Positions 21,401-63,407 of a stretch of 64,000 nucleotides of DNA are shown here, one piece after another. The position numbers were made by a program, and so were the translations under genes. How positions within the stretch are numbered: position 1 is the stretch's first letter; every line of letters starts with the position of its first letter. The DNA is from Zootoca vivipara (lineage: Eukaryota), in the NCBI RefSeq assembly GCF_963506605.1, contig NC_083277.1, forward strand, positions 84,444,001 to 84,508,000, given 5' to 3'. The notes under the pieces are model-generated. The model did not search any database and had not been told where the DNA came from. It saw only the letters and a list, made by a program, of their open reading frames with translations.

Positions 21401-24400
21401 GGGGGAGAGCCCGCTTTTGATGCCCGCCAGACGAACCTGCCCCCAAAACTCTCGACTTGGGGTTTTTAAAGGGAATCCGCTTTGCTGGAGCGGCATTCCC
21501 TTTCTTCAAAGTGCCAAGGTCCGCTCCGCTGAACGGACCTCCAACCTCGATGGCGACGCGACCAACCGGAAGTCTCTATTCTTTCTTCACTTCAATGTAC
21601 TGCTTATCCTCTTGATCCAATTCCCTCTCCCATTTTAGTAAATATTGATTTGTTTTTCTCTTACCTATACCTTTCTTCAAGTGTTGTTTCTTCTTGCTTT
21701 GAACATGCTAGTGTCCAACAGTCATAAAAATGTCCACATATATTCCCGCCCCCCGCCCCTGACTTTGGGAAGCTAGGATTTTTAAAGCAAGATGTGACAA
21801 CCCTTGAGGGAAACAAGAGGTAAATTGTGTGTGGTGGTGAGGGCCCAATAATTACTAAACTGGATTTAGATCAGGGGGGACTTAACTGCTCCTCTTAATC
21901 TTATCTAAATGTGACAGTTTTCTTTCATCTAATTTTTTATGGTCCTTTTCAGCTGGTTTTTGATTCAAACATTCTAGTGTGACTGCTCTGTGGAAAATCT
22001 AAAGTGGTATTATGTGCTGAAAGACACCAGCTTTCTCTGTATGTACTTTCATCAGTTTTGGGTACAGGTGATCACTCTGCTTCTTTTACAGTTCTTTCGG
22101 ACTGGACAGTACCATCCTCTCCTGCTTTCACTCCTGTGTCATGAAAGCTTCTTTTAAGTCTTCCTCAATTATTATTCTAAGCCCTCTTCTCTTCACTCTT
22201 TATATGCTTTCTCTTAGCAATCCAATTTATTCTTGTGTCTTGCAATGTGCCACCATTATACAAATGATTTCAGGCTCTATTGTTTGGTCCTTCTCTCCCC
22301 TTTACCAATACCTTATTTCAAATTGTCTGTATCTGCCTGGATGTCACTGTGCAAAAGATACTTTGCCTTCTCTTCCAAAGTTCCAATTGGCACCAACCTT
22401 CAAGAGTTTTGGTGTTATCTTTGATCTCTTTCTATTTCGGCTCACATGTCTACTTAAGGTCTGCCAATTTAATTTCTATAAGATTTCTAAATTTGTTCTT
22501 TATGTCAGCTAACATTCTTGTTCAGACCTACAGCCTACCTTGTGTTAACTACTAAAATGTCTTGTTCACTGATCTTCCTGTTTCTCAATTTAAACATATT
22601 ATTTCTGTTTTCTCTTTTCTGCTTTCTTCAGTCATTTTATACCTCTCTATATATTTCCCTTCACAGGCTTCATGAAGTTTAAACTTCTTAAAGGTTAAGA
22701 AAAGAAGTTTAAACTTTGTATAAAGCAATACAGGAAGGAATACTGATAGAAAAAAAGGGCAAGAATATGATTAGATATGAAGGTTACACCTGTTCATGTT
22801 TTTGCCCCCTTTTCTATCTGTTGCCTTCCATTTTTGTCTTTGGTAACTCAGTTAATAAAGCACTGTTATTTTTAATTAAATCTCTACTATATAGTTATAT
22901 TTCTTAAACCCATGCTTTCTTTTTTATGTCTAGGACTATTTTCCCTTTACATTTTTGCCCAGCCCCATCATCTAATGAAGAAACAGTTTTAAAAACTTCT
23001 GTCTTGATGTGCTATTTGGATTTTTTTTGTTTGTTTCTTCCTTACTTCTAAAGTTCATTACTGTAGTCTTTTAACGCTTTCCTTCTTTCAGATAGTGCAG
23101 CTCCACTTCCCTTCCCTTTTGTTTCTTCATAGCTTCTGCTAAACGGGGACTTATTTCTGTACAATGGCCTAGGAGCATATGTTAATAATTTTATAACTAA
23201 AAAATTACAAAGTAAGTTTACTTTTGATAACTATGAGTCTTAAGTGCCATCAGAAAGGGGAGGAAGAACTGGACTTTTCAACAGCTGTTTTGAATAGACA
23301 CAAAACTTTTAATTTTAAAAACAAGAGTTACTGAGGTATAAAATTACCACAGACCAACCACAGAGGTTTTCAGTAATGTAAGTGCCATTCTTTGAAATAT
23401 GTTAACAGACATGCTTTGAAGATGGAGCTTCCTTCAAATATTGTGCACAGATTTTACAGACTAAACTCTGTTGTTTTATTCTCTTCCCTGAGCTCATAAG
23501 CCATTAGTCATTATCTCGTTTTAAGCATGATTCATTGCACCTATTCCAAAAATTCTGCCACATTTGGCAATTATGCCTAGCATGAGATGATTTGCATCTG
23601 TAATAGATTGCAACACCCAATGCAGCACAACAAATGAGCAAGTAGGTGTTTGATTCGTGCTGTAACTAGCAAAACCATTTTTAAAATTAAGAATAGCATG
23701 CCCATGCCTGTGCTTAGTTGCCAGAAAGAAGCTCACTTTTACTGACAGTAAATCACTAGTTATCAGGCTCTATACCCCTTGTATGAGGAGAACATGTGTT
23801 TCCAGAAATCATCTCCCTTTGCAGCCACTGCCAGTCAATTTGGACAGTACTGAAACAGATGGACTCAGTATAAGGCAGCTTCCTCCGTTACTATGACCAG
23901 TGCTTTCTCTTAAAATCTTAGAATCCTTCTGGGAATTCATAATGGCTACCAAGCAAAGACAGCAATTTCCCTGCTTTGACCCAGCCAGGATTACTGCCTT
24001 GGCATATCGGGATAATACCAGGATAATAGCTTTATTACAAATTTTATATACCATGATAGCTGTGATTCTGGCATTGCAGGGGATTGGACTAGATGACCCA
24101 TGGGATCCCTTCCAACTCCACAATTCTCTGATTCTATGATCATCATAAAGTAGCTTTTAAGGTGTAGGATAGAATCCTGCTTTCTGCAAGTGTGGTAAAG
24201 GATACCTGTCTAAGGTGATAGCTTGTGAGATCATGTCCTATTGCAGGAAGGGGACCCTTTCACAGCCTGAAGATCACATTCCCTCCTGGGTCCCCTGTGG
24301 GGGCTGCACTCCATTGGTGGGTGGAGCCAGGTGTAAAAGTAGGCACAGCAAGGGATGTGGATTCTTACATTTCTCCAGTAGTTTACATTCCATCCATGCA

Positions 24401-27400
24401 AACGTCAGCTGGTGCAAAACGCAGCAGTCTAGATTGCATCTAGGGTTTCCCTTTCAGAACTCTGCATTCTTTCCCAGTTTGTTTCTTAGCACAATTCAAA
24501 GTAGTAGTAACTGCCTATAAAGTCTTAAAACAATTGGGGACCAGGATGAGTGAAGAACCACCATCTCTCGCTTGAGCTTTCCTTCCACTTGCAGTAATCA
24601 TTGGAAGTCTATCTTAATCATCCTTGAGTGGGCATTTTCAACCAGAGTGGCCAGGTTGAGGAGCTCCCAGCACTAGGATTCTAGTGGATGCCTGTCTGAT
24701 TCATGACTTACCTATTTGCATTTCAGTGTGCTACAAAACCTTGTTGTTTTGCCATGTCTTTCAGTTTGGTTTTGTCTCTCCCCCCTTCCCCACATATTTT
24801 AACGTATGGCTTCTAGTTTTTAGTTTAGTTCTAAGTTTAGTCTTTATTATTTTATGGAGAGTATATTGTTTTAATCAATGCACAGGGTCCCCATGAGAAG
24901 CCAGAAGACACTATTATTTATATTTATTAAAATATTTATAATAAATAAACCACAATGGGAGTTACTTTTGAATAGACATGTACCAGATTGCATTGTTAGT
25001 CTTCTAATTATAAAAGACCTGTGTGAACTCATTGCACATAAAAGGAGAATATGCTTTCTGTGATGAGTGCATTTTACTTCTTAACTCTCCCATACATTAC
25101 TCAACAGTAAAACCTGAAAAACCTGCCAATGCAGTCTAACATTTGATGACAATGCACTGTGTTTACTAGGCCCGATAACGGTCAAAAAATTACCACATAA
25201 CTTAGGTTCAAAAAAGCAAGTCACCCACAAAGGAACTGTGGTAATTAGGGAAGAACAGGCTTCAGCATTATGGGCCTAAGTGATGTCTGACCATTTTGTT
25301 TTGTTTCTAACCCACAGACCAATGACATTTCTGACATGTGCCCCAACAACAGTTTAGCCTTTGCCTGATACTGCTTCACATTATTTTCAAATGCCTTTAG
25401 TGCAATAGTCTGTATAATAAATAGGAAAAATAGCTGTTATACCCCATTACATTAAAAAAAAAGACGTGTGTACCTGGGAAGGGATAGGCAGAGACTTTAG
25501 ATATATATATTTTAAAAACAAACCAATATTTAAAGTGGATTTGTAGGCTTCTGAGATAAAGATTTCCCTCTTTAGCCCTCACATCGATTCTAATGAGGAA
25601 AACCAGGAACAGATGAAGGAGCTCAGCGGAGAAAGGAGAGGGTGTAAGTGAACTTCTGGCATGTTCCTAACTCTCCAAACCATTACAGTGGTACCTTGGG
25701 TTAAGAACTTAATTTGTTCTGGAGGTCTGTTCTTAACCTGAAACTTCTTAACCTGAGGTACCACTTTAGCTAATGAGGCCTCATGCTGCTGCCGCGCCAC
25801 TGCCACGCAATTTCAGTTCTCATCCTGAAGCAAAGTTCTTAACCTGAGGTACTATTTCTGGGTTAGCGGAGTCTGTAACCTGAAGCATCTGTAACCCAAG
25901 GTACCACTGTACAAATATGGCGTCTGAACTGAGCCATTGTGTTTGTTTGGTGTTTTTTTTTTTAAAAAAAACACAACGTAGGGCTTTATTTTGAATGCTT
26001 AACCTATAGACTGAGATATGACTTTATTAAAAAGACAAAATATCTGAGAAAAATCAGAACAAATTCATTTACCTGTACGAGGCTTTGCATTTTAGTTTAA
26101 ATCCTAAAAAAAAAAAAGCACCCTTGTGGAGGGAGATCAGGGGCAGCCATTAACACCATTTATTTATGCTGACTTAAAACAAAATATAAACCAGGACATT
26201 CTTTTACATCTTGGAAATGTACTCACTAGCAGGGCTTGGGCAGTCCCATCATGCACACCAAATACAACTTTGCTGCTGAAATTTTGAGAGCTTATTTAAA
26301 AAAAAAATAGCCTCCCCAAAGTCAACCCCCCTGAATGAAAGATCAGACCTGTTCTGATGTTTAGATTTATTTCTTTAAAGGGAAAATGCAGGTCCCTATA
26401 AAAAAGAACTGAACTAAAAATAATAAATCACAAGTACGACAAATCAGGTAGCTAGGTGGGTGGGTGCTCAGAGACATTTCAAAAGTGGCAAGTAAGGTAG
26501 GGTAGGGATAAGAGGAGGGAGAGAGATTTAAATATGCATCCCTATTGACAATAAACAACACATTTAGATAATTTAAGAATATAAATGGCAAGAGGCAGCA
26601 TTTTAGCAGCAAAGTGCTAAAAGGGTATGTCACAAAAGAAAAGGGCAAAGCCACAGCTCAGAGGAAATACGGTGTGGTTGTTCTTGGGGGGATCACACGT
26701 TCTGAGTCTGGAACTGCACGGAAGAGCTTTGGTTCCCTTGTATTTACATCTTTAAATACCATGATTGAGGCAATATTTCCACAGCGGTAGCAGTAGTTCG
26801 GAGCAGACCACACTGTGACCAACTTCTCATCAAACATAAATTTATAACCTTCATGTACCAGCTGGTGGGCTCGGCAGATGAGCTTTAAGTTGTTGATATG
26901 GACAAACTCATTTGTGACTTTTGCCCCAAACAGCCAGCCTGCACCTCGGGGACTTATGGCCCAGGTGTCCACATCTTCTGGGTCAGACCAAACAAGGTCA
27001 CAAAAAGCTCCTTTGTGTGGGATCTCTTGGTTGCGCTCAATAGTCCGAATCTGGTCCAGTGTTTTTATGTCTGGAGACAGGCCCCCATGTACACAGAGGA
27101 TTTGCTCATCTATTAACGCTGCTACTGTGAGCATGTCAAAAACTTTGGTGCAGTATCTCCAGGCATTAGCATTACCATATTTGGTTTGGCATTCATCATA
27201 AAATCCATACACTTGAGTTATCTGTCTGCTCTCATGGTTCCCACGTAAAAGTGTGATGCGATCAGGCCATTTTGCTTTTAGGGCAAGAAGATAGGTAAAC
27301 GTCTCAAGGCTATAATAGCCTCTGTCTACAAAGTCACCCATAAATATATAGTTTGTGTCAGGAACCTGACCTCCAGTTCTGAACAATTCGCATAAATCAT

Positions 27401-30400
27401 AAAACTGTCCATGTATGTCGCCGCAGACTGTAACTGGTGTAGACAATGGCTGCACGTTAGATTCTTCTAGGAGGAGGTCACAGACGTAGTCACACAAGCG
27501 CTTGAGGTCGTTCTCGGGCAGATACTTGCAAAGCCGCGCAATCTCCACATACTTGTCCAAGTCCAGGGGCGCCATTTTGGGAGGGCAGCTTTCTCGGGGG
27601 AGAAGGTTGTAGGTAGGAAAAGAGAAAAAGTGGAGAGGAGGGTGCTGCGAGGTAAGAGAGAGGACTGGAAGTGAGAACACGGCACTTCCTGATGGTGAAG
27701 CGAGAAACCCACTCCCTCGAATTTCCGGATGAAAAAGGGCGAATGTCCCTTAAAAGCAATAAATAAGCGAAAGCCAAAAGGAAGAAGGTCGCAAGGACGC
27801 CTCCTTTTCTCTTCCCCTCTCTCCCTCCCCTCCCACGGCAGGAGGGAAGCCAGACCGGAAACGAGGAGACCCACTTCCGCCGTCTGAACTGAGCCATTGT
27901 GAATCAGATCGTCTCTTGTACACTTTCTACTCCCTAATACACTGTTCCGGATACAGAAATAACTAAGACGAACTTTTCTACTGGGTGGTGTGTATGATGT
28001 ACATATTTGCTGTCAGAAAGGCAGCACATTTCTTAAAATGTTTCTTCTTCAGACATCTCCACCCTGACCCTACCATTGCCCCATGCCTTCAAGGCTTCTG
28101 GCACCCAATACAAATGGGTGCATGCAGAAAATAATTACCAGCTTTGCCCCAAGTAGTTATAATTATTTTTATTTAATGGCACAGGCGGCATTTTCCCCTC
28201 AAGCATAAAGCAAATGAAAAAAAAGTTTCGCTTTGAAAGGAGATTGAAATTATCTGCAAAATGGTGTGCACAAAGTTGTATCATCTTTTTCCCTGGGATA
28301 TGTCCTGAGCATTGCCTAGTATAGCACCTTGAGCAGAGTCAATGCTTAGTGCTTCATTTCTATGGGTTCATTTTCCCATTTATCAACAGACATAAGAAAA
28401 GCTAGATCTAAAGTCTATTGCAGTTTGCAACTTGAAATGTCCATCTTTTCAGCTACCAGCTGATTTGGTACCAATTGGCAGATCAGCTTGATGGGAAGGA
28501 CTCAATTTCAAATGGCAGGCTGAATCTACTCACAAAAAACTCATGAGCTGAAACTATTAGCTGAATATTTGCAAATAGCTACAATAAGAATATGCTGGGA
28601 AGAATGACCAAAAAGTGAATCCCCATCTCTCCTGGCAAGAGGAAGGATGGTGTCTACATACCATGATGCTGTACTGTAAATCCATGCTTATTTACAAATA
28701 TGTTAGTCCCATTAATCACATTTGAATAATGTTTAGAACTGGACTGCATGGGTGCAGTCCTGCTGCTACTGAAGTCAGTGACAAGTCTGTCATTGGGTGG
28801 TGTAGTCATTGTCAAAAATGAACTCATTAAATTTTTGATGTGGAATCATATTCTGAGGAAGATTTTATTTTGCTTTGAATTAAATCAAATTAAAGATATG
28901 CATAGGTTCAGGTTTTCAGCTGCATCTGACATGGTCTGAGCCTCTCATTTGTCAAGTTCAATGAAGGAATGAACTATAAATAAATGTTCCAGTGTTAATG
29001 CCAAAAATACTCATCCTATCCATATCAGTTCTTCAGAAACACTTGGTAGTACTATTATAATCTTGTGCTATACTTATTCTTGTCTCTTCCTTTTTTAAAA
29101 GAACATAAATCAGACCCTCATCCACCTTTACTACTTTTAGGCAGATGTCCAGATGTCTTGCACTGTTCTAAATATTTAGCATATCAGCAGGCTAAAAAGA
29201 TTCATCATATTGATTCAGATATATGTGGTGAATTTTTCACTCTCTGTTTGTTAGGGTAATACCATTCAGAACCTATGCTTAACCTCCTGTGAGGGCCAGC
29301 TCTACCATTAAGCAGAGACAGCTGCCTTAGACGGCTATGGGGTGTCATGAAAGGGTAGTAAATTGAAAGTTATTTAATTTGCCGTTGTATTTTTACTGCT
29401 GAGAAGGGGAGAGATACGGTACTTGTGGGATTTTCTGCCACAGGTGCAAAATAAATTGACTACCTTTGAGTACTAGACACCTTGTCTTGGCAGTGGGTGA
29501 GCTGGAAGCATTTGCTCTTCCACGCAGTCAGAAAAATGGGCCCCAGTCACCATGTTTTCAGCTACAAGAAGAAAGATACATGCTACATTGGGGTAATGTA
29601 CATTGTTTTTATTGGTCTTTACCCTAGAAACGATGGAAGAAACGATCACATGACCATTTCCCTGTCAGGTGCTGATAAGTAAAGTATGTTTTTCAGTGTC
29701 CACCACGGAAACCAAGTGAGCTACCAGTGGAGGAAGAGATAGCATTCCGGATGCTGAGAAAGGAAGGTGCATGGCTGTACATGCATGGGGGCAGTGTGAG
29801 AATGAATGAATGAGTGCATTGGTGGGTGTAAGGTAAAGTTTAAAAGGGAGGTTCACAGTGGATGTGTGTAAATGGGGTATCCCCAGCCACTTTTGGCTTC
29901 AGACCTATCCAGTCAGAGGTGGAGCTAGCTGCTCTGGCACCCGGAGCAGCGCATATGTGTCCCAGAGGGGCGCAGCCCGTGGTGAGCGTCCCAGGGGGTG
30001 GCACTGCAATGCCAACCCCCCTCAGGCTTGACACCCGGTGCGGATTGCACCCCCTTCCTCCGCCAGTGTATCTACTGCCAGTAAGCAGGCAGCCAGAGAG
30101 CATTTTCCCTGAGGAAATGTGGTACTCAACTTTTTTATAAAGTTCCCCACTCTGCTGCATATGGTTACATAGTTTATACTGTACTTTTAAAACAGCAGAC
30201 AGCTACCTTCAAGAACTCAAAAAGTGATTAATTTTTCAAAAAATAAAAATCTCCACCAATACTCAGCATTCCCGATGGTCGCTCTAAGCAAACTGAAAGA
30301 AGCACAAGATCTGTATAGCAAACCTTTCCAGTCTCTATTTAAGAAGAGGTATTCTTCGTAGCTTCTCAAAGCAGTTGTAAAGCACAAGCTTGCTGACCTG

Positions 30401-31346
30401 GCACAGAACACAAACCCCAAATACAAACTTACACCATTCCTCTTCTTCAATGAAATATGCACAGCAAAATGTTAATCTCCTCCATTTAGTGTGCATCCTT
30501 TAATTTGGTGAGAATATGAGCATCACTGTCGTCATGATTTCAAGAAAACAAAGTGGAGGCAGCAGTTCATTTTAGCACTAGGATTAAATGACTTTAAGAG
30601 GACCAAATAAAATTGTTTGGCTGTGTCCTTGTATGTGCTTTAGTTCTTCTGCCTGTAGCTCTGCTGGGTCTACAGAACACTTAGTTTCACCAAGCTAGTC
30701 TGACCATGGTCATTACATCTACATGACATTTAACTTTACTGACTCATAAGGAAATTTTACAGTGCATTTGGGCTCACACCTTGTAATTCAGTTGACAGGA
30801 ATGGGCAACCTTCTAACGTTAAGGGAGGTGTGTGAAACCTGATTATTTGCAATAACCTAAACGTGGATCGTAGGGAAGCATAATCAAAGCAGATGACGGC
30901 AACACGGCAGCTAGTAGCCGATGGGCTTTCCTGCCATTGCAGTTTCTAAAGAAGGCTACCAGAGAGCTCAAGGCACTTGGGAAGGCAGATCATGCCCTGT
31001 CATGGAAGCCCTGCCCTATAACTGCCAAGGTGTGGGAGGTGTCTGCGGTGACTCAGTAATCGCGAAAGGCAGCCCTGCACAAACACTACCTTCCTCCGTG
31101 CAGTCTACAGGTGTAAGAAAGAGCTACCTGCCGCCCAATAACCGAGGCTAGCCTAGAGCTTGGCCGCAGGTACAACCCCCGCAGGCTCCCCCGTTGCTGC
31201 TTACCCATATTGTACCCGTAAGGCGACTCGGTGGCTCCATCCTCCAGGCTGGCTAGTATCTCTCCTTTGCCCACGTCGCTGTCGCCCACCAGCAGGAATT
31301 TCAGCAAGAAGTCATAAGCTTTCACAGGGCTGCCCACGTGGTTCAT
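12405..31346 (-). CDS. RAB40B: Ras-related protein Rab-40B (Rab GTPase + SOCS box), 6 exons, 278 aa
   Basis: Exons 31346-31205, 15920-15860, 15308-15248, 14923-14846, 14059-13837 and 12676-12405 (142/61/61/78/223/272 = 837 nt). Motifs GDSDVGK, WDTSGQ and GNRLHL, SOCS box [11 protein letters not shown]...[12 protein letters not shown]-terminus CTRNSCKIS. Lies between WDR45B and FN3KRP as human RAB40B does. Confidence 0.96.
15455..15570 (-). mobile_element. MIR-like/squamate SINE fragment
   Basis: CCAAGGTCACCCAGTGAGCTTCATGG...GGAATTTGAACCCTGGTCT pattern; ends approximate. Confidence 0.5.
16950..17242 (+). mobile_element. L2-type LINE 3' fragment
   Basis: ORF2 tail [15 protein letters not shown]...[10 protein letters not shown]; 3' end CCCAGCCAGATGGGTGGGGTATAAATAATAAA(TTA)n. 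Short related ends at ~11377-11452 (-) and ~56567-56605 (+). Confidence 0.8.
19610..21574 (-). mobile_element. 5'-complete non-autonomous L1-like retroelement (~1.97 kb, no RT)
   Basis: Starts GACTTCCGG with a CpG-rich 5' region; AATAAA at 19631-19626, then an A tail; 10-bp TSD TCTATTCTTT at 19600-19609 and 21575-21584. Confidence 0.75.
20344..20754 (-). CDS. 136-aa ORF inside the L1-like element, with a coiled-coil-like segment (possible ORF1p remnant)
   Basis: ATG-initiated; heptad-like [34 protein letters not shown] followed by an acidic tract; purine-rich sense strand as in L1. Confidence 0.35.
   Translation of the reverse strand: MSTSGTSVFQRTVLKLLGNLIDGQQQLRAQLRDVREQCQELNKTLQNEINNGKLIPEDRRQEYTEEEGNAQQGEEKDQDFMDSSDPLEWEKQELELISWEMWENVNRQGKECGKMEGQREGKAGAWVVKWERMGVG
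21960..22620 (+). mobile_element. Old, highly degenerate L2 LINE RT fragment
   Basis: Remnant [14 protein letters not shown]...[10 protein letters not shown], resembling L2 LGPLLFSLY...YHLYADDTQIY, split across frames. Confidence 0.55.
24060..24141 (+). mobile_element. CR1 3' terminal fragment
   Basis: GGACTAGATGACC...CCCTTCCAACTC...ATTCTATGAT, the typical CR1 3' end. Confidence 0.75.
25686..25909. mobile_element. Tc1/mariner (pogo/Tigger-like) MITE
   Basis: TA|CAGTGGTACCTTGGGTTA...TAACCCAAGGTACCACTG|TA terminal inverted repeats with TA TSD. Confidence 0.9.
25942..27880 (-). other. PPP6C: Processed (retrotransposed) copy of PPP6C mRNA: 5' leader, CDS, 3' UTR and A-rich tail
   Basis: 21-bp direct repeat CGTCTGAACTGAGCCATTGTG at 25921-25941 and 27881-27901; T-rich tail 25942-25963; AATAAA (minus) at 25990-25985; no introns. 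Confidence 0.95.
26658..27575 (-). CDS. PPP6C: Serine/threonine-protein phosphatase 6 catalytic subunit, intact intronless retrocopy (305 aa)
   Basis: MAPLDLDKY...TTTPYFL, 918 nt with no disruption; PPP motifs GDIHG, GDFVDRG, RGNHE and SAPNY. Matches recalled human PPP6C except L for V at residue 44. Expression cannot be shown from sequence. Confidence 0.93.
29914..30068. mobile_element. Small hAT-like MITE
   Basis: Imperfect TIRs CAGAGGTGGAG / CTCCGCCAGTG; imperfect 8-bp TSD TATCCAGT / TATCTACT. Confidence 0.45.
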
Positions 31347-38800: not shown

Positions 38801-41323
38801 AATGGAGGTTTTTAAATCATAGCATAATATAGTTTCCTATGTTTAGAAAGCTATTCTGTTCAGAACAGATATTCACCACTTCTCTCTGTTTTAATAGGTA
38901 AAGGTGAAGAACAAACGGGGGTCCAGTTTGTGGAAAAATTCGGGTTCCACACTGTTACATGTTGTGGCTATCTTCCACAGGTATGATCTGAACTAATGGC
39001 TCTTCCGCATTGAACAAATCTTCCAGTTTTTTGTTTACTTCTAATTTTCCTTTAATTGGGAAAGTCTGAATTTGTTTGAATAAGAGGACTTTTAAATATT
39101 AATTCAGAGAACTGTAACTAGGTATGAAGATTCCAGGGCTATTGTCATAACTTTTGGTATTAGCAACCGATCTTCACCTTTCAGCTAACACAGCAGCAAA
39201 TGTCGGTGTTACAGCTGCACCCAAGGGCGTACCCACCATGCGGCAAGTTAGGGCAGCTGCCCTACTCTAGAAGCAGGGCTGGTGGGCAGAGGCGGAGCAC
39301 AGCCCGGCGGAGCGCGAGTTCGCCATTCCCGCCGCACGGCGCCGCACCCTCCCTCCAGCTCCCCGGCGCGCCCTCAGGCAAGGCCAAGCGCGGCGGGGAA
39401 CCAGGGAGCGCGGCGCGGTGGGCGGGAACGCCGAACTCGCGCTCCGCTGGGCTGGGCTCCGCCTCCGCCCACCAGCCCTGCTGCTAGGGAGGAGCACAGC
39501 CCGAAGGAGCGCGAGTTCGCCGTTCCCGCCCGCCGCGCTGCGCCCTCCCTCCAGCTCCCCGTCGCGCCCTCTGGCAAGGCCAAGCGCGGCGGGGAACCAG
39601 AGAGCGCGGCGCGGCGGGCAGGAACGCTGAACTCGCGCTCCGCTGGGCTGGGCTCCGCCTCCGCCCACCAGCCCTGCTGCTAGGGAGGGGCACAGCCCGG
39701 CGGAGCGCGAGTTCGCTGTTCCCGCCCACTTTGTGGCCCCTCCCCTTCCGTGCCTTGGCCCCTCCCCTTGCCCCCCCTAGTTTTGATCCTGGGTACGCCC
39801 ATGGCTGCACCCGTGAATGCCCCTGAAAACAACTGCTGTGCCTTACGCAATATCAAGAGTTGGTGTTAGTAACAGCTAATTAACACAGCAAGAGTCTTCT
39901 TTTTATATATAGAAGTGTAAAATTCCATATTTTTGTAAAGTCCGTAATAGTCTGTCAGTCTCATCCACAAACCATTTAAATCAGTTTCAGCACCAGAGAA
40001 GTAAGTATGTCTAGATGAGTCTCCATACAAATGGTATGGCTTAATTGGTTTATGAATTGCTTGTCTTATTTCCATCAAAGGGCCTTCTTTAAGGCATCCT
40101 CTCATAGAGCCAAACTGGCTGAATTTTTGACTACTTGCTTGTTTAGGTGAATGACTGGCAACAGGATTGGGTGACTTTCTTTGCCAGGCAACGAATTCAA
40201 CCTCAGATGGACATGATTGAGAAGAACTCTGGAGACAGGGAAGCAAGAGAACTTTGGGCAAAACTCCAGGTAACGATGTCCCATGGGGACCATAGAGGGA
40301 ATTGTCTCATTTGTAGAAGTGGGGTTGTTCTCAAATTTGTGTAAAGTTTCTGTAATACCTACACTGTCTGTGCAAATGTCATGATCCCCTTCTCCTCAGA
40401 ACCTAATAAACTAGTGGAAAAGAGTCTTTTCACCAACCTCTCTCTGAGGTCTCTACTAATTGTGGAAGAACAATACCGTAGCACCACTGAAGAGACCTCA
40501 TGTGGAAAGGACCAAATAATATTTGTGGGGAGAGGAGGAGCTATTTGAATATACAATAGTACATTTTAAAAACAATTAAAGACTAAAATAAGCATTCTCT
40601 TCATTGAAATAAACACTGATATCATGTGGCTATATAATGTAAGAAGGAATGTTTGAGAATTTTTTAAAATTTAAATACAAAAGGCTTAAAAATCTTCCTT
40701 AAGCCTTTTGATAAAGTAGTACCTCAGATATCTGGTTAAAATGCTAACAAGACTCTGGAAAATCCTGTTACAGTACTTCATTTTTGAATGTGATGTGCCC
40801 CCTACTGTTCATGTTACTTTAATTCAAGTCCTCTGTGCCTAGGTTGTCCACACCCATTGAAATTAGGTTTGTCTCTTTTTCTCTATACAGTATTGGGATT
40901 TGATGTGTCTACTGCTTAAAGCCACAAATTAGAACACCCCACCTCCTTACAATTAACTTTAGCAACTCCTGCTTTCTTTTTCAGCTGAAGATGCCCAGTT
41001 TGTTTGGCGATATGGAAATAGTTCCTGCTCTTCTACATGGGGATCTGTGGGGAGGAAATGTAGCTGAAGATGACTCTGGTCCAGTTATCTTTGACCCTGC
41101 AGCTTTCTATGGTCACTCTGAGTATGAGTTAGCAATTGCTGGGATGTTTGGTGGCTTTAGTGGTTCATTTTATTCTGCCTACCACAGCAAAATCCCCAAA
41201 GCACCAGGGTTTGATAAACGGCTCAAGCTGTACCAGCTATTTCACTATATGAACCATTGGAATCATTTTGGAGGAGGGTACAGAGGTTCATCTATCAATA
41301 TAATGAGGAATTTGGTCAACTGA
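35214..41323 (+). CDS. FN3KRP: Ketosamine-3-kinase (fructosamine-3-kinase-related protein), 6 exons, 309 aa
   Basis: Exons 35214-35354, 36493-36644, 38170-38261, 38898-38980, 40147-40269 and 40985-41323 (141/152/92/83/123/339 = 930 nt). Motifs [32 protein letters not shown] and IFDPA; QRIQPQMDM and the [11 protein letters not shown]-terminus match recalled FN3KRP rather than FN3K. Confidence 0.95.
35856..35991. mobile_element. 136-bp palindromic hAT-type MITE
   Basis: Near-perfect foldback CAGG..TCCCCCAACTCGGCCCTCCAGATGTTTTGGGACTACAA / reverse complement; near-TSD ...TAACA. Decayed relatives at ~55060-55155 and ~62950-63090. Confidence 0.85.
39222..39803 (+). mobile_element. GC-rich non-autonomous hAT element (582 bp) with ~197-bp internal tandem duplication
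   Basis: TIRs CAAGGGCGTACCCA / TGGGTACGCCCATG (13/14 match); perfect 8-bp TSD GCTGCACC (39214-39221, 39804-39811); strand arbitrary. Confidence 0.9.
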
Positions 41324-43820: not shown

Positions 43821-44130
43821 CGGCTTGCTGATCAGAAGGTTGGCGGTTCGAATCCCTGTGACGGGGTGAGCTCCCGTTGCTTGGTCCCAGCTCCTGCCAA
43901 CCTAGCAGTTCGAAAGCACGTCAAAATGCAAGTAGATAAATAGGAACCGCTACAGCGGGAAGGTAAACGGTGTTTCCGTGTGCTGCTCTGGTTTGCCAGA
44001 AGTGGCTTTGTCATGCTGGCCACATGACCTGGAAGCTATACACCGGCTCCCTCGGCCAATAATGCGAGATGAGCGCGCAACCCCAGTCGGTCACGACTGG
44101 ACCTAATGGTCAGGGGTCCCTTTACCTTTA
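43821..44130 (+). mobile_element. Sauria SINE, 5'-truncated
   Basis: Reverse-complement match to 5031-5376; ends GGTCAGGGGTCCCTTTACCTTTA. Confidence 0.88.
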
Positions 44131-44814
44131 TTGGGGTTGCATTGTTTTTCACAACTTTTCCCTAACCAGGGCCGAAACTCAAAAACAAAATACAACTATT
44201 TACGAAGCAGGTTTTTACATTAGGAAATGGAGCTTCGGTATTTCCCAGTTGTGAAGAAACTTTTTTCTTTCGTAAAATCGAAGACATAATAGGGAGAAAA
44301 AACTTATTTATGTGAAGTGGAACATACGGAGAGAAAATAATTAGACTGCTACAGATTCCGGCTTTATACCAAACACCCCATTGGCCATAATTATCAATGC
44401 GCGCAGGATGCGATGTGCACCACGGAAGTTAGAGCGGAAGTAGTTAAAATCCAGACCGGAAGCGCAATGAGGATCGCGGTATTGCGCCAGCGACTAGGAG
44501 AAAAATTCAATCATCTCGATGGTTTCTTGTCTGTTAAGCCATACGAAATCTGTGTGGCCAAGGCTTCGTCACATGAAACGAGGAAATCGGGTTACAGTTA
44601 GTTTCCTACTGGCCGGGCTGCCTCACATGGTGCATGGTTCTCTTTCTGGCTATTGGCTGCTGGGACGCTCGCGAGCTGGGCCCAAGGACGAGATTGGCCC
44701 GCGAGCGGTCAAGTGGGCGGGGAATCTGGGCAACGTGCGCTCGACGGCGGTGTGGAGTGGAGCTAGCAGCTAGTTGGCTGCGTCTCCTGAGGAGCGGCGG
44801 AGCACGGTGGCTGG

Positions 44815-63407
<18,593 letters not shown>

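What the first reader, a model, noticed from the sequence alone, without database searches (positions are those of the whole stretch)
25921..27901. Intact full-length PPP6C retrogene nested in RAB40B intron 1
Seen: a 1,939-bp processed mRNA copy (305-nt leader, uninterrupted 305-codon ORF, ~690-nt 3' UTR, AATAAA, tail) between perfect 21-bp TSDs, in the same orientation as the host. All catalytic motifs and the C-terminal TPYFL are intact. Established: vertebrate PPP6C is a multi-exon, normally single-copy, highly conserved gene located elsewhere, and retrocopies are much rarer outside mammals. Inference: either a very recent, possibly polymorphic insertion or a retained second PP6 catalytic gene. 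I know of no description of it.
Basis: partly seen in the sequence, partly recalled or inferred. Interest (0 to 1): 0.85.

Follow-up and report, generated by a model that had tools for sequence, protein, structure and literature searches.

The report
Young intact PPP6C retrocopy in RAB40B intron
A spliced, reverse-transcribed copy of the phosphatase gene PPP6C sits, complete and still readable, inside the first intron of RAB40B in what is probably a lizard genome; it is a real and recent insertion of an ordinary kind, and nothing available here shows that it works as a gene.

Summary
A 1,939-bp intronless PPP6C copy lies on the minus strand at 25942-27880, between perfect 21-bp target-site duplications. 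It has a 305-nt leader, a 305-codon ORF, a 694-nt 3' UTR, an AATAAA signal and a short impure A-tail. It sits in RAB40B intron 1, on the same strand as the host gene.

The protein matches the amniote-wide PP6 catalytic subunit at 304 of 305 residues; the only change is V44L, codon TTG. This exact protein is already in NCBI/UniRef, recorded on one 123.6-Mb contig, so it is catalogued. I found no paper that describes it.

My best reading (0.7) is a young L1-type processed retrocopy whose ORF is intact because little time has passed. A neutral simulation shows that this state requires either under about 0.5% divergence since insertion or purifying selection. The TSDs and the retained CpGs also look young.

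A working retrogene or a RAB40B-PP6c chimera is not excluded (about 0.2). Several possible splice acceptors in the leader are in frame with RAB40B exon 1.

The scan has noted other intact retrocopies in this genome, so the rarity argument is weak.

The parts
27881..27901 (-). Target-site duplication, copy at the 5' end of the retrocopy
   Evidence: Identical 21/21 to 25921-25941.
27576..27880 (-). Retrocopied 5' leader: 305 nt, no upstream ATG, GC 54%, CpG o/e 0.65. It has ETS-like GGAAGT/TTCCGG motifs at its start and several AG acceptor candidates.
   Evidence: The flanks have CpG o/e 0.17.
26661..27575 (-). Uninterrupted 305-codon PPP6C ORF. The start context is CCCAAAATGG. V44L (TTG) is the only change from the amniote consensus.
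26658..26660 (-). Stop codon
25964..26657 (-). Retrocopied 3' UTR, 694 nt and AT-rich. It holds four AATAAA motifs; the last one, at 25985-25990, lies 21 nt before the tail.
25942..25963 (-). A-rich tail: A11 followed by CACCAAACAAA
25921..25941 (-). Target-site duplication, copy at the 3' end of the retrocopy
31205..31346 (-). Host RAB40B exon 1 coding part: 47 codons plus 1 base, with donor GTAAGC (a phase-1 intron)
15860..15920 (-). Host RAB40B exon 2, which marks the end of intron 1

Best explanation
This is a young processed retrocopy of PPP6C. A mature, polyadenylated PPP6C mRNA was reverse-transcribed at a staggered chromosomal nick, most probably by a LINE-1-type element of this probably squamate genome. 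It was inserted 3.3 kb into RAB40B intron 1, in the sense orientation, and the insertion duplicated 21 bp of target. The ORF is intact, and one residue from the amniote consensus, because too little time has passed for decay, not because selection has been shown. The copy is probably lineage- or species-specific and may still be polymorphic. It is transcribed at least passively, as part of the RAB40B pre-mRNA. Shown here: the anatomy, the insertion hallmarks, the protein identity and the host context. Inferred: the L1 machinery, the young age and the lack of function.
For: The insertion hallmarks are all present: perfect 21-bp TSDs frame exactly one mRNA-shaped unit with a PAS and an A-tail. 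The markers that protein-level selection cannot protect also look young. The TSDs match 21/21. The leader keeps CpG o/e 0.65 and the CDS 0.50, against 0.17 in both 2-kb flanks. One amino-acid change, at a residue that is invariant in the six other vertebrate PPP6C proteins aligned, is what a few neutral hits would give. The simulation puts the most likely neutral divergence near 0.1% and rejects 0.5% or more. The exact protein was seen on a single contig among about 15 billion proteins, so there is no sign of identical orthologues elsewhere. The genome makes such copies often: the scan notes list CDC7, TBCB, PIGP, PITHD1, NUDT21 and PLIN retrocopies. Lepidosaur retrocopies are 90.6% species-specific.
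Against: The parental PPP6C sequence of this genome could not be obtained, so dS, UTR divergence and the age are not measured. If the copy is more than about 0.5% diverged, neutrality fails. The tail is short and impure (A11 + CACCAAACAAA), which may mean some age, or internal priming on an A-rich stretch of a longer UTR. The nick site reads TT|CACA on the sense strand, not the L1 consensus TT|AAAA. CpG retention in the leader would equally fit an unmethylated, active promoter. An annotation pipeline called it protein-coding.
Confidence: 0.7

Rival explanations
1. It is a functional retrogene: a second PP6 catalytic-subunit gene. It would be expressed either from its own leader, which is CpG-rich and carries ETS-like motifs, or from a recruited promoter, and it would be kept by purifying selection.
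For: The copy is full-length: the ORF has a good start context, the leader has no upstream ATG, and the PAS is retained. The leader meets CpG-island-like values (305 nt, GC 54%, o/e 0.65). The ORF state is about ten times better explained by constraint than by neutrality over the range of ages the TSDs allow (my integration). The sequence is annotated as a protein in NCBI/UniRef. Functional retrogenes are a known outcome: 88-280 are preserved per mammalian species (PMC4772013).
Against: The prior is low, since only a few percent of retrocopies become genes. The single change hits a residue that is invariant in all other PPP6C proteins aligned, which suggests relaxed rather than PPP6C-grade constraint. 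The neutral markers look young too. There is no expression or orthologue evidence. The exact protein is on one contig only.
Confidence: 0.2
2. It is a host-retrocopy chimera. RAB40B exon 1 would splice to an acceptor in the retrocopy leader and the transcript would end at the retrocopy's PAS. The product would be either a RAB40B(1-47)-linker-PP6c fusion protein or a truncated RAB40B transcript. This is a subset of the functional reading, and it matches scan note s1-851010.
For: The copy is in the sense orientation, 3.3 kb below a phase-1 donor. Exon starts at 27748, 27688, 27664 and 27592 would be in frame, with no stop before the PPP6C ATG. Intronic retrocopies expressed as chimeras with upstream host exons are documented: 13 in human and 14 in mouse (PMC4772013).
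Against: The acceptor with the best pyrimidine tract (16/18, exon start 27644) is out of frame and would stop after 51 codons. No splice-site model was scored and no RNA data were available. A fusion would put 47 Rab residues and about 30 UTR-derived residues in front of an enzyme whose N-terminus is highly conserved.
Confidence: 0.05
3. It is an assembly artefact or cDNA contamination rather than a germline insertion.
For: Nothing specific supports this. The junctions could not be checked against reads.
Against: Contamination or mis-joins do not create a perfect 21-bp duplication of the local target around a complete mRNA with a tail, embedded in continuous intron sequence.
Confidence: 0.02

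Closest known systems
L1-mediated processed retrocopies, including young full-length retroCNVs such as those described in canids (PMC9435743) and equids (PMC10249811)
   Same: An intronless copy of a housekeeping mRNA that keeps its 5' UTR, whole CDS, 3' UTR, PAS and A-tail, with long perfect TSDs and an ORF still intact.
   Different: The host is probably a squamate, not a mammal. The tail is only 11 A followed by an A/C-mixed 11-mer, and the nick site is not the canonical TT|AAAA. Polymorphism has not been tested.
Canonical PPP6C (PP6 catalytic subunit, PPP family, Pfam Metallophos PF00149)
   Same: 304/305 residues match, and all metal-binding and catalytic motifs and the C-terminal TPYFL are present.
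   Different: It has no introns, sits in a new locus inside RAB40B, lacks the parental upstream promoter, and carries V44L.
Intronic retrocopies expressed as chimeras with host exons (e.g. mouse Taf9 retrocopy in Ak6; PMC4772013)
   Same: Sense orientation in a host intron, below a CpG-island promoter, with possible acceptors upstream of the ORF.
   Different: No chimeric transcript has been observed here. This is only possible from the sequence.

Membership tests
Processed (LINE-mediated) retrocopy | Contiguous copy of a spliced mRNA with no introns | tested here: met
   The 915-nt CDS is uninterrupted and colinear with the full 305-aa protein. That PPP6C is multi-exon in vertebrates is established knowledge; it was not checked in this genome.
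Processed (LINE-mediated) retrocopy | Poly(A) tail directly after a polyadenylation signal | tested here: met
   AATAAA at 25985-25990 and an A-run starting 21 nt later. The tail is short and impure: A11 + CACCAAACAAA.
Processed (LINE-mediated) retrocopy | Target-site duplications flanking the insert | tested here: met
   21/21 identical, 25921-25941 and 27881-27901.
Processed (LINE-mediated) retrocopy | L1 endonuclease-type target (sense strand TT|AAAA) | tested here: inconclusive
   The site reads GATT|CACAATGG: TT before the nick but no A-run after it.
Processed (LINE-mediated) retrocopy | A parental multi-exon gene elsewhere in the same genome | not testable with these tools
PP6 catalytic subunit (PPP family) | Metallophos domain with GDxHG, GDxVDRG and GNHE motifs and a PP2A-like C-terminal tail | tested here: met
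   Pfam PF00149, E=3e-44. 99.7% identity to the Amniota PPP6C protein.
Functional retrogene | Intact ORF | tested here: met
Functional retrogene | Transcription and translation of the copy itself (copy-specific variants) | not testable with these tools
Functional retrogene | dN/dS significantly below 1 against the parent, or conservation in orthologous position across species | not testable with these tools
   No parental or orthologous nucleotide sequence could be obtained. The simulation only sets the threshold, about 0.5% divergence.
Host-retrocopy chimeric gene | Sense orientation in a host intron, with a usable acceptor in frame with the upstream exon | tested here: inconclusive
   The orientation is met. 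Four in-frame AG candidates exist, but the best-looking acceptor is out of frame. No splice model was scored and no RNA data were available.

The most novel reading that the evidence does not exclude
The copy is a working second PP6 catalytic gene in a lizard lineage. It would be expressed from the RAB40B promoter or from its own CpG-rich leader, possibly as an in-frame RAB40B(1-47)-PP6c fusion. This would add a paralogue to a phosphatase that is otherwise single-copy and almost invariant across amniotes.
Probability: 0.2. Interest if true: 0.55.

Novelty: new member of a known kind. Interest (0 to 1): 0.3.

Why it matters
PPP6C is an essential, near-invariant, normally single-copy phosphatase gene. 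An expressed extra copy, or a Rab40-PP6c fusion, would be a natural dosage or neofunctionalisation experiment, and a clean example of gene birth by retroposition outside mammals. As it stands, the main value of the copy is as a well-preserved marker of recent L1-type mRNA retroposition in this genome. It is also a possible presence/absence marker, and its sense-oriented polyadenylation signal might disturb RAB40B. Young intact retrocopies are common wherever such machinery is active, so specialist surprise is low unless function is shown.

Tried and rejected
- **Sequencing runs.** I did not resend or trim it, and I sent none of its letters to any search tool afterwards. Only local scripts touched it.
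- **Rfam on the whole window.** It found nothing.
- **Literature.** The two PPP6C searches (with 'retrogene'; with retrocopy/processed-pseudogene terms) found no relevant paper.
- **Taxon identification.** An Atlas search with the 136-aa ORF at 20347-20754 gave only weak hits. A protein search with the CR1-like fragment at 5354-5650 found no candidate. 'Squamate/lizard' therefore rests on other scan notes and on my own unverified recognition of repeats.
- **Paralogous empty site.** The left flank is a SINE-like repeat that ends 9 bp before the TSD, so no other copy spans the insertion point.
- **Joined models.** The chimera frames were worked out only in a local script.
- **Rejected readings.** An assembly artefact is ruled out by the TSDs and the continuous flanks. 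Replacement of a lost parent gene is untestable here and has a low prior.
Full report
**What is there.** The element lies on the minus strand. Two perfect 21-bp direct repeats (CGTCTGAACTGAGCCATTGTG) sit at 25921-25941 and 27881-27901 and enclose a 1,939-bp insert at 25942-27880. Read in the sense direction, the insert has these parts:
- a 305-nt leader (27880 to 27576) with no ATG;
- an ATG in the context CCCAAAATGG;
- 305 uninterrupted codons (27575 to 26661) and a stop (26660-26658);
- a 694-nt AT-rich 3' UTR;
- an AATAAA at 25990-25985;
- an A-run starting 21 nt later, reading A11 and then CACCAAACAAA, directly followed by the second repeat.

**What it encodes.** Pfam assigns the ORF to Metallophos (E=3e-44). 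An exact-sequence look-up found the 305-aa protein already in NCBI, NCBI nr and UniRef, on a single contig of 123,560,741 bp. Its 90% cluster holds vertebrate PPP6C proteins. Against the sequence shared by about 140 amniote taxa (P0003) it is 304/305 identical. The only change is V44L, and codon 44 is TTG. Residue 44 is V in all six other vertebrate PPP6C proteins aligned. All catalytic motifs and the TPYFL end are therefore present.

**Host context.** Motif scans and reading of the sequence place a Rab40-type gene on the minus strand:
- Exon 1 CDS is 31346-31205: 47 codons plus one base, with donor GTAAGC.
- Exon 2 is 15920-15860, and further exons lie near 15298 and 14029.
- A SOCS-box exon lies at 12677-12408 (Pfam SOCS_box, E=6.9e-9).

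Intron 1 is 15921-31204. The retrocopy starts 3.3 kb below the exon 1 donor, in the host's orientation. A fructosamine-kinase exon at 40904-41320 fits the conserved WDR45B-RAB40B-FN3K neighbourhood; that synteny is my own knowledge.

**How it arose.** The insert is a complete spliced mRNA with a PAS and an A-tail, and the target is duplicated around it. That is the signature of target-primed reverse transcription of a cellular mRNA by a LINE-1-type element. Two details are atypical and remain unexplained. The tail is short and half of it is an A/C mixture. The nick site reads GATT|CACA instead of TT|AAAA. The tail may be decayed. It may be a genome-encoded A-rich stretch of a longer parental UTR, which would mean internal priming. 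Or it may reflect a non-mammalian LINE. Only the parental sequence can decide.

**How old it is, and whether it is constrained.** I therefore used clocks internal to the copy.

- **Neutral markers.** The TSDs match 21/21. That only bounds divergence at roughly 7% per copy or less (my arithmetic: exp(-42d) >= 0.05). CpG o/e is 0.65 in the leader and 0.50 in the CDS, against 0.17 in both 2-kb flanks. So CpG decay has barely begun, or the leader is unmethylated.
- **Simulation of neutral decay of this CDS.** The model used CpG transitions at 8x, a transition:transversion ratio of 2:1 and indels at 10% of substitutions. It assumed the parent encodes the amniote consensus protein. The probability of 'ORF intact and at most one amino-acid change' is 0.70 at 0.1% divergence, 0.19 at 0.3%, 0.04 at 0.5% and 0.001 or less at 1%.

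So the copy is either younger than about 0.5% divergence, roughly a few million years at typical vertebrate rates, or it is under purifying selection.

I integrated these curves by hand over the ages the TSDs allow. The observed state is about ten times better explained by constraint than by neutrality. The prior that a new retrocopy becomes a gene is a few percent; 88-280 preserved retrocopies per mammalian species (PMC4772013) stand against thousands of copies. This leaves roughly 0.2 for a functional gene. This is inference, not measurement. The single replacement falls at an otherwise invariant residue, and the exact protein occurs on one contig only. Both lean toward a young, unconstrained, lineage-restricted copy.

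**Possible routes to expression (inferred only).** Because it is sense-oriented in intron 1, the copy is transcribed within the RAB40B pre-mRNA.
- A local script listed AG sites with pyrimidine-rich upstream tracts. Exon starts at 27748, 27688, 27664 and 27592 would be in frame with the phase-1 exon 1 donor, with no stop before the PPP6C ATG.
- The site with the best tract (16/18 pyrimidines, exon start 27644) is out of frame and would terminate after 51 codons.
- An in-frame RAB40B(1-47)-PP6c fusion, as scan note s1-851010 proposes, is therefore possible from the sequence but unsupported.
- The retained PAS could also truncate some RAB40B transcripts.
- Chimeric expression of intronic retrocopies is documented in mammals: 13 in human and 14 in mouse (PMC4772013).
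- The leader begins with ETS-like motifs and has island-like CpG content, so weak autonomous initiation cannot be excluded.

**How unusual it is.** Two PPP6C searches, one with 'retrogene' and one with retrocopy and processed-pseudogene terms, found no relevant paper. The kind of element, however, is ordinary.
- The scan's own notes on this genome list CDC7, TBCB, PIGP, PITHD1, NUDT21 and PLIN retrocopies. Two of these are described as intact, and one as sense-oriented in an intron (unchecked notes).
- Other notes, including follow-up reports, call the genome a lizard or squamate. My own attempts to confirm the taxon failed.
- A survey of 244 VGP genomes reports retrocopy-dominated pseudogene profiles in lepidosaurs, 90.6% species-specific and 22.5% with intact ORFs, with a formation bias toward housekeeping genes (10.64898/2026.06.26.734816).

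**Limits.** Junction support, polymorphism and expression remain untested.

**Verdict.** This is a real, complete, young PPP6C processed retrocopy in RAB40B intron 1. It is a new member of a well-known kind, already catalogued as a predicted protein, and its function is undemonstrated. Confidence is 0.7 that it is an unconstrained recent insertion and about 0.2 that it is a working gene or chimera.

Noticed in passing
window 25668-25912: A SINE-like repeat of about 245 bp lies directly left of the insertion and ends 9 bp before the TSD. It has internal TAACCTGAGGTACCAC motifs. Other copies lie at 50605-50843 (85%), 8651-8826 (86%), 54469-54670 and 62247-62305.
   Followed up: partly
window 25942-25963 and 27899-27905: The retrocopy tail is A11 + CACCAAACAAA, and the nick site is GATT|CACA rather than TT|AAAA. 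This is unexplained: a decayed tail, internal priming on a longer UTR, or a non-mammalian LINE.
   Followed up: partly
window 5354-5650 (-): A 99-aa open fragment looks, from memory only, like the C-terminal end of a CR1/L2-type LINE ORF2 (...[11 protein letters not shown]...LWNSL...). It has no Pfam hit, and the protein search found no candidates.
   Followed up: partly
window 20347-20754 (-): An ATG-started 136-aa ORF in RAB40B intron 1, rich in coiled-coil-like sequence. It has no Pfam hit. The only Atlas lead is weak: 0.78 to a cluster in which 14% of members carry the L1 ORF1 trimerisation domain.
   Followed up: partly
window 40904-41320 (+): An exon encoding the C-terminal third of a fructosamine-3-kinase family protein (Pfam Fructosamin_kin, E=5.9e-40), upstream of RAB40B.
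   Followed up: partly
window 57422-57877 (+): An exon ending in ...[42 protein letters not shown], a metallo-beta-lactamase His motif that looks ELAC/RNase Z-like from memory. The Pfam hits are only sub-threshold.
   Followed up: partly
window 3115-4130: A GC-rich stretch that is open in several frames on both strands, with internally repeated peptides. It overlaps the region another scan note calls a Helitron.
   Followed up: no
window 39164-39852 and 45021-45691: Two GC-rich stretches give near-identical peptides on both strands (e.g. ...[18 protein letters not shown]), so they are copies of one repeat. One of them lies in the CpG-rich block at 44001-46000.
   Followed up: no
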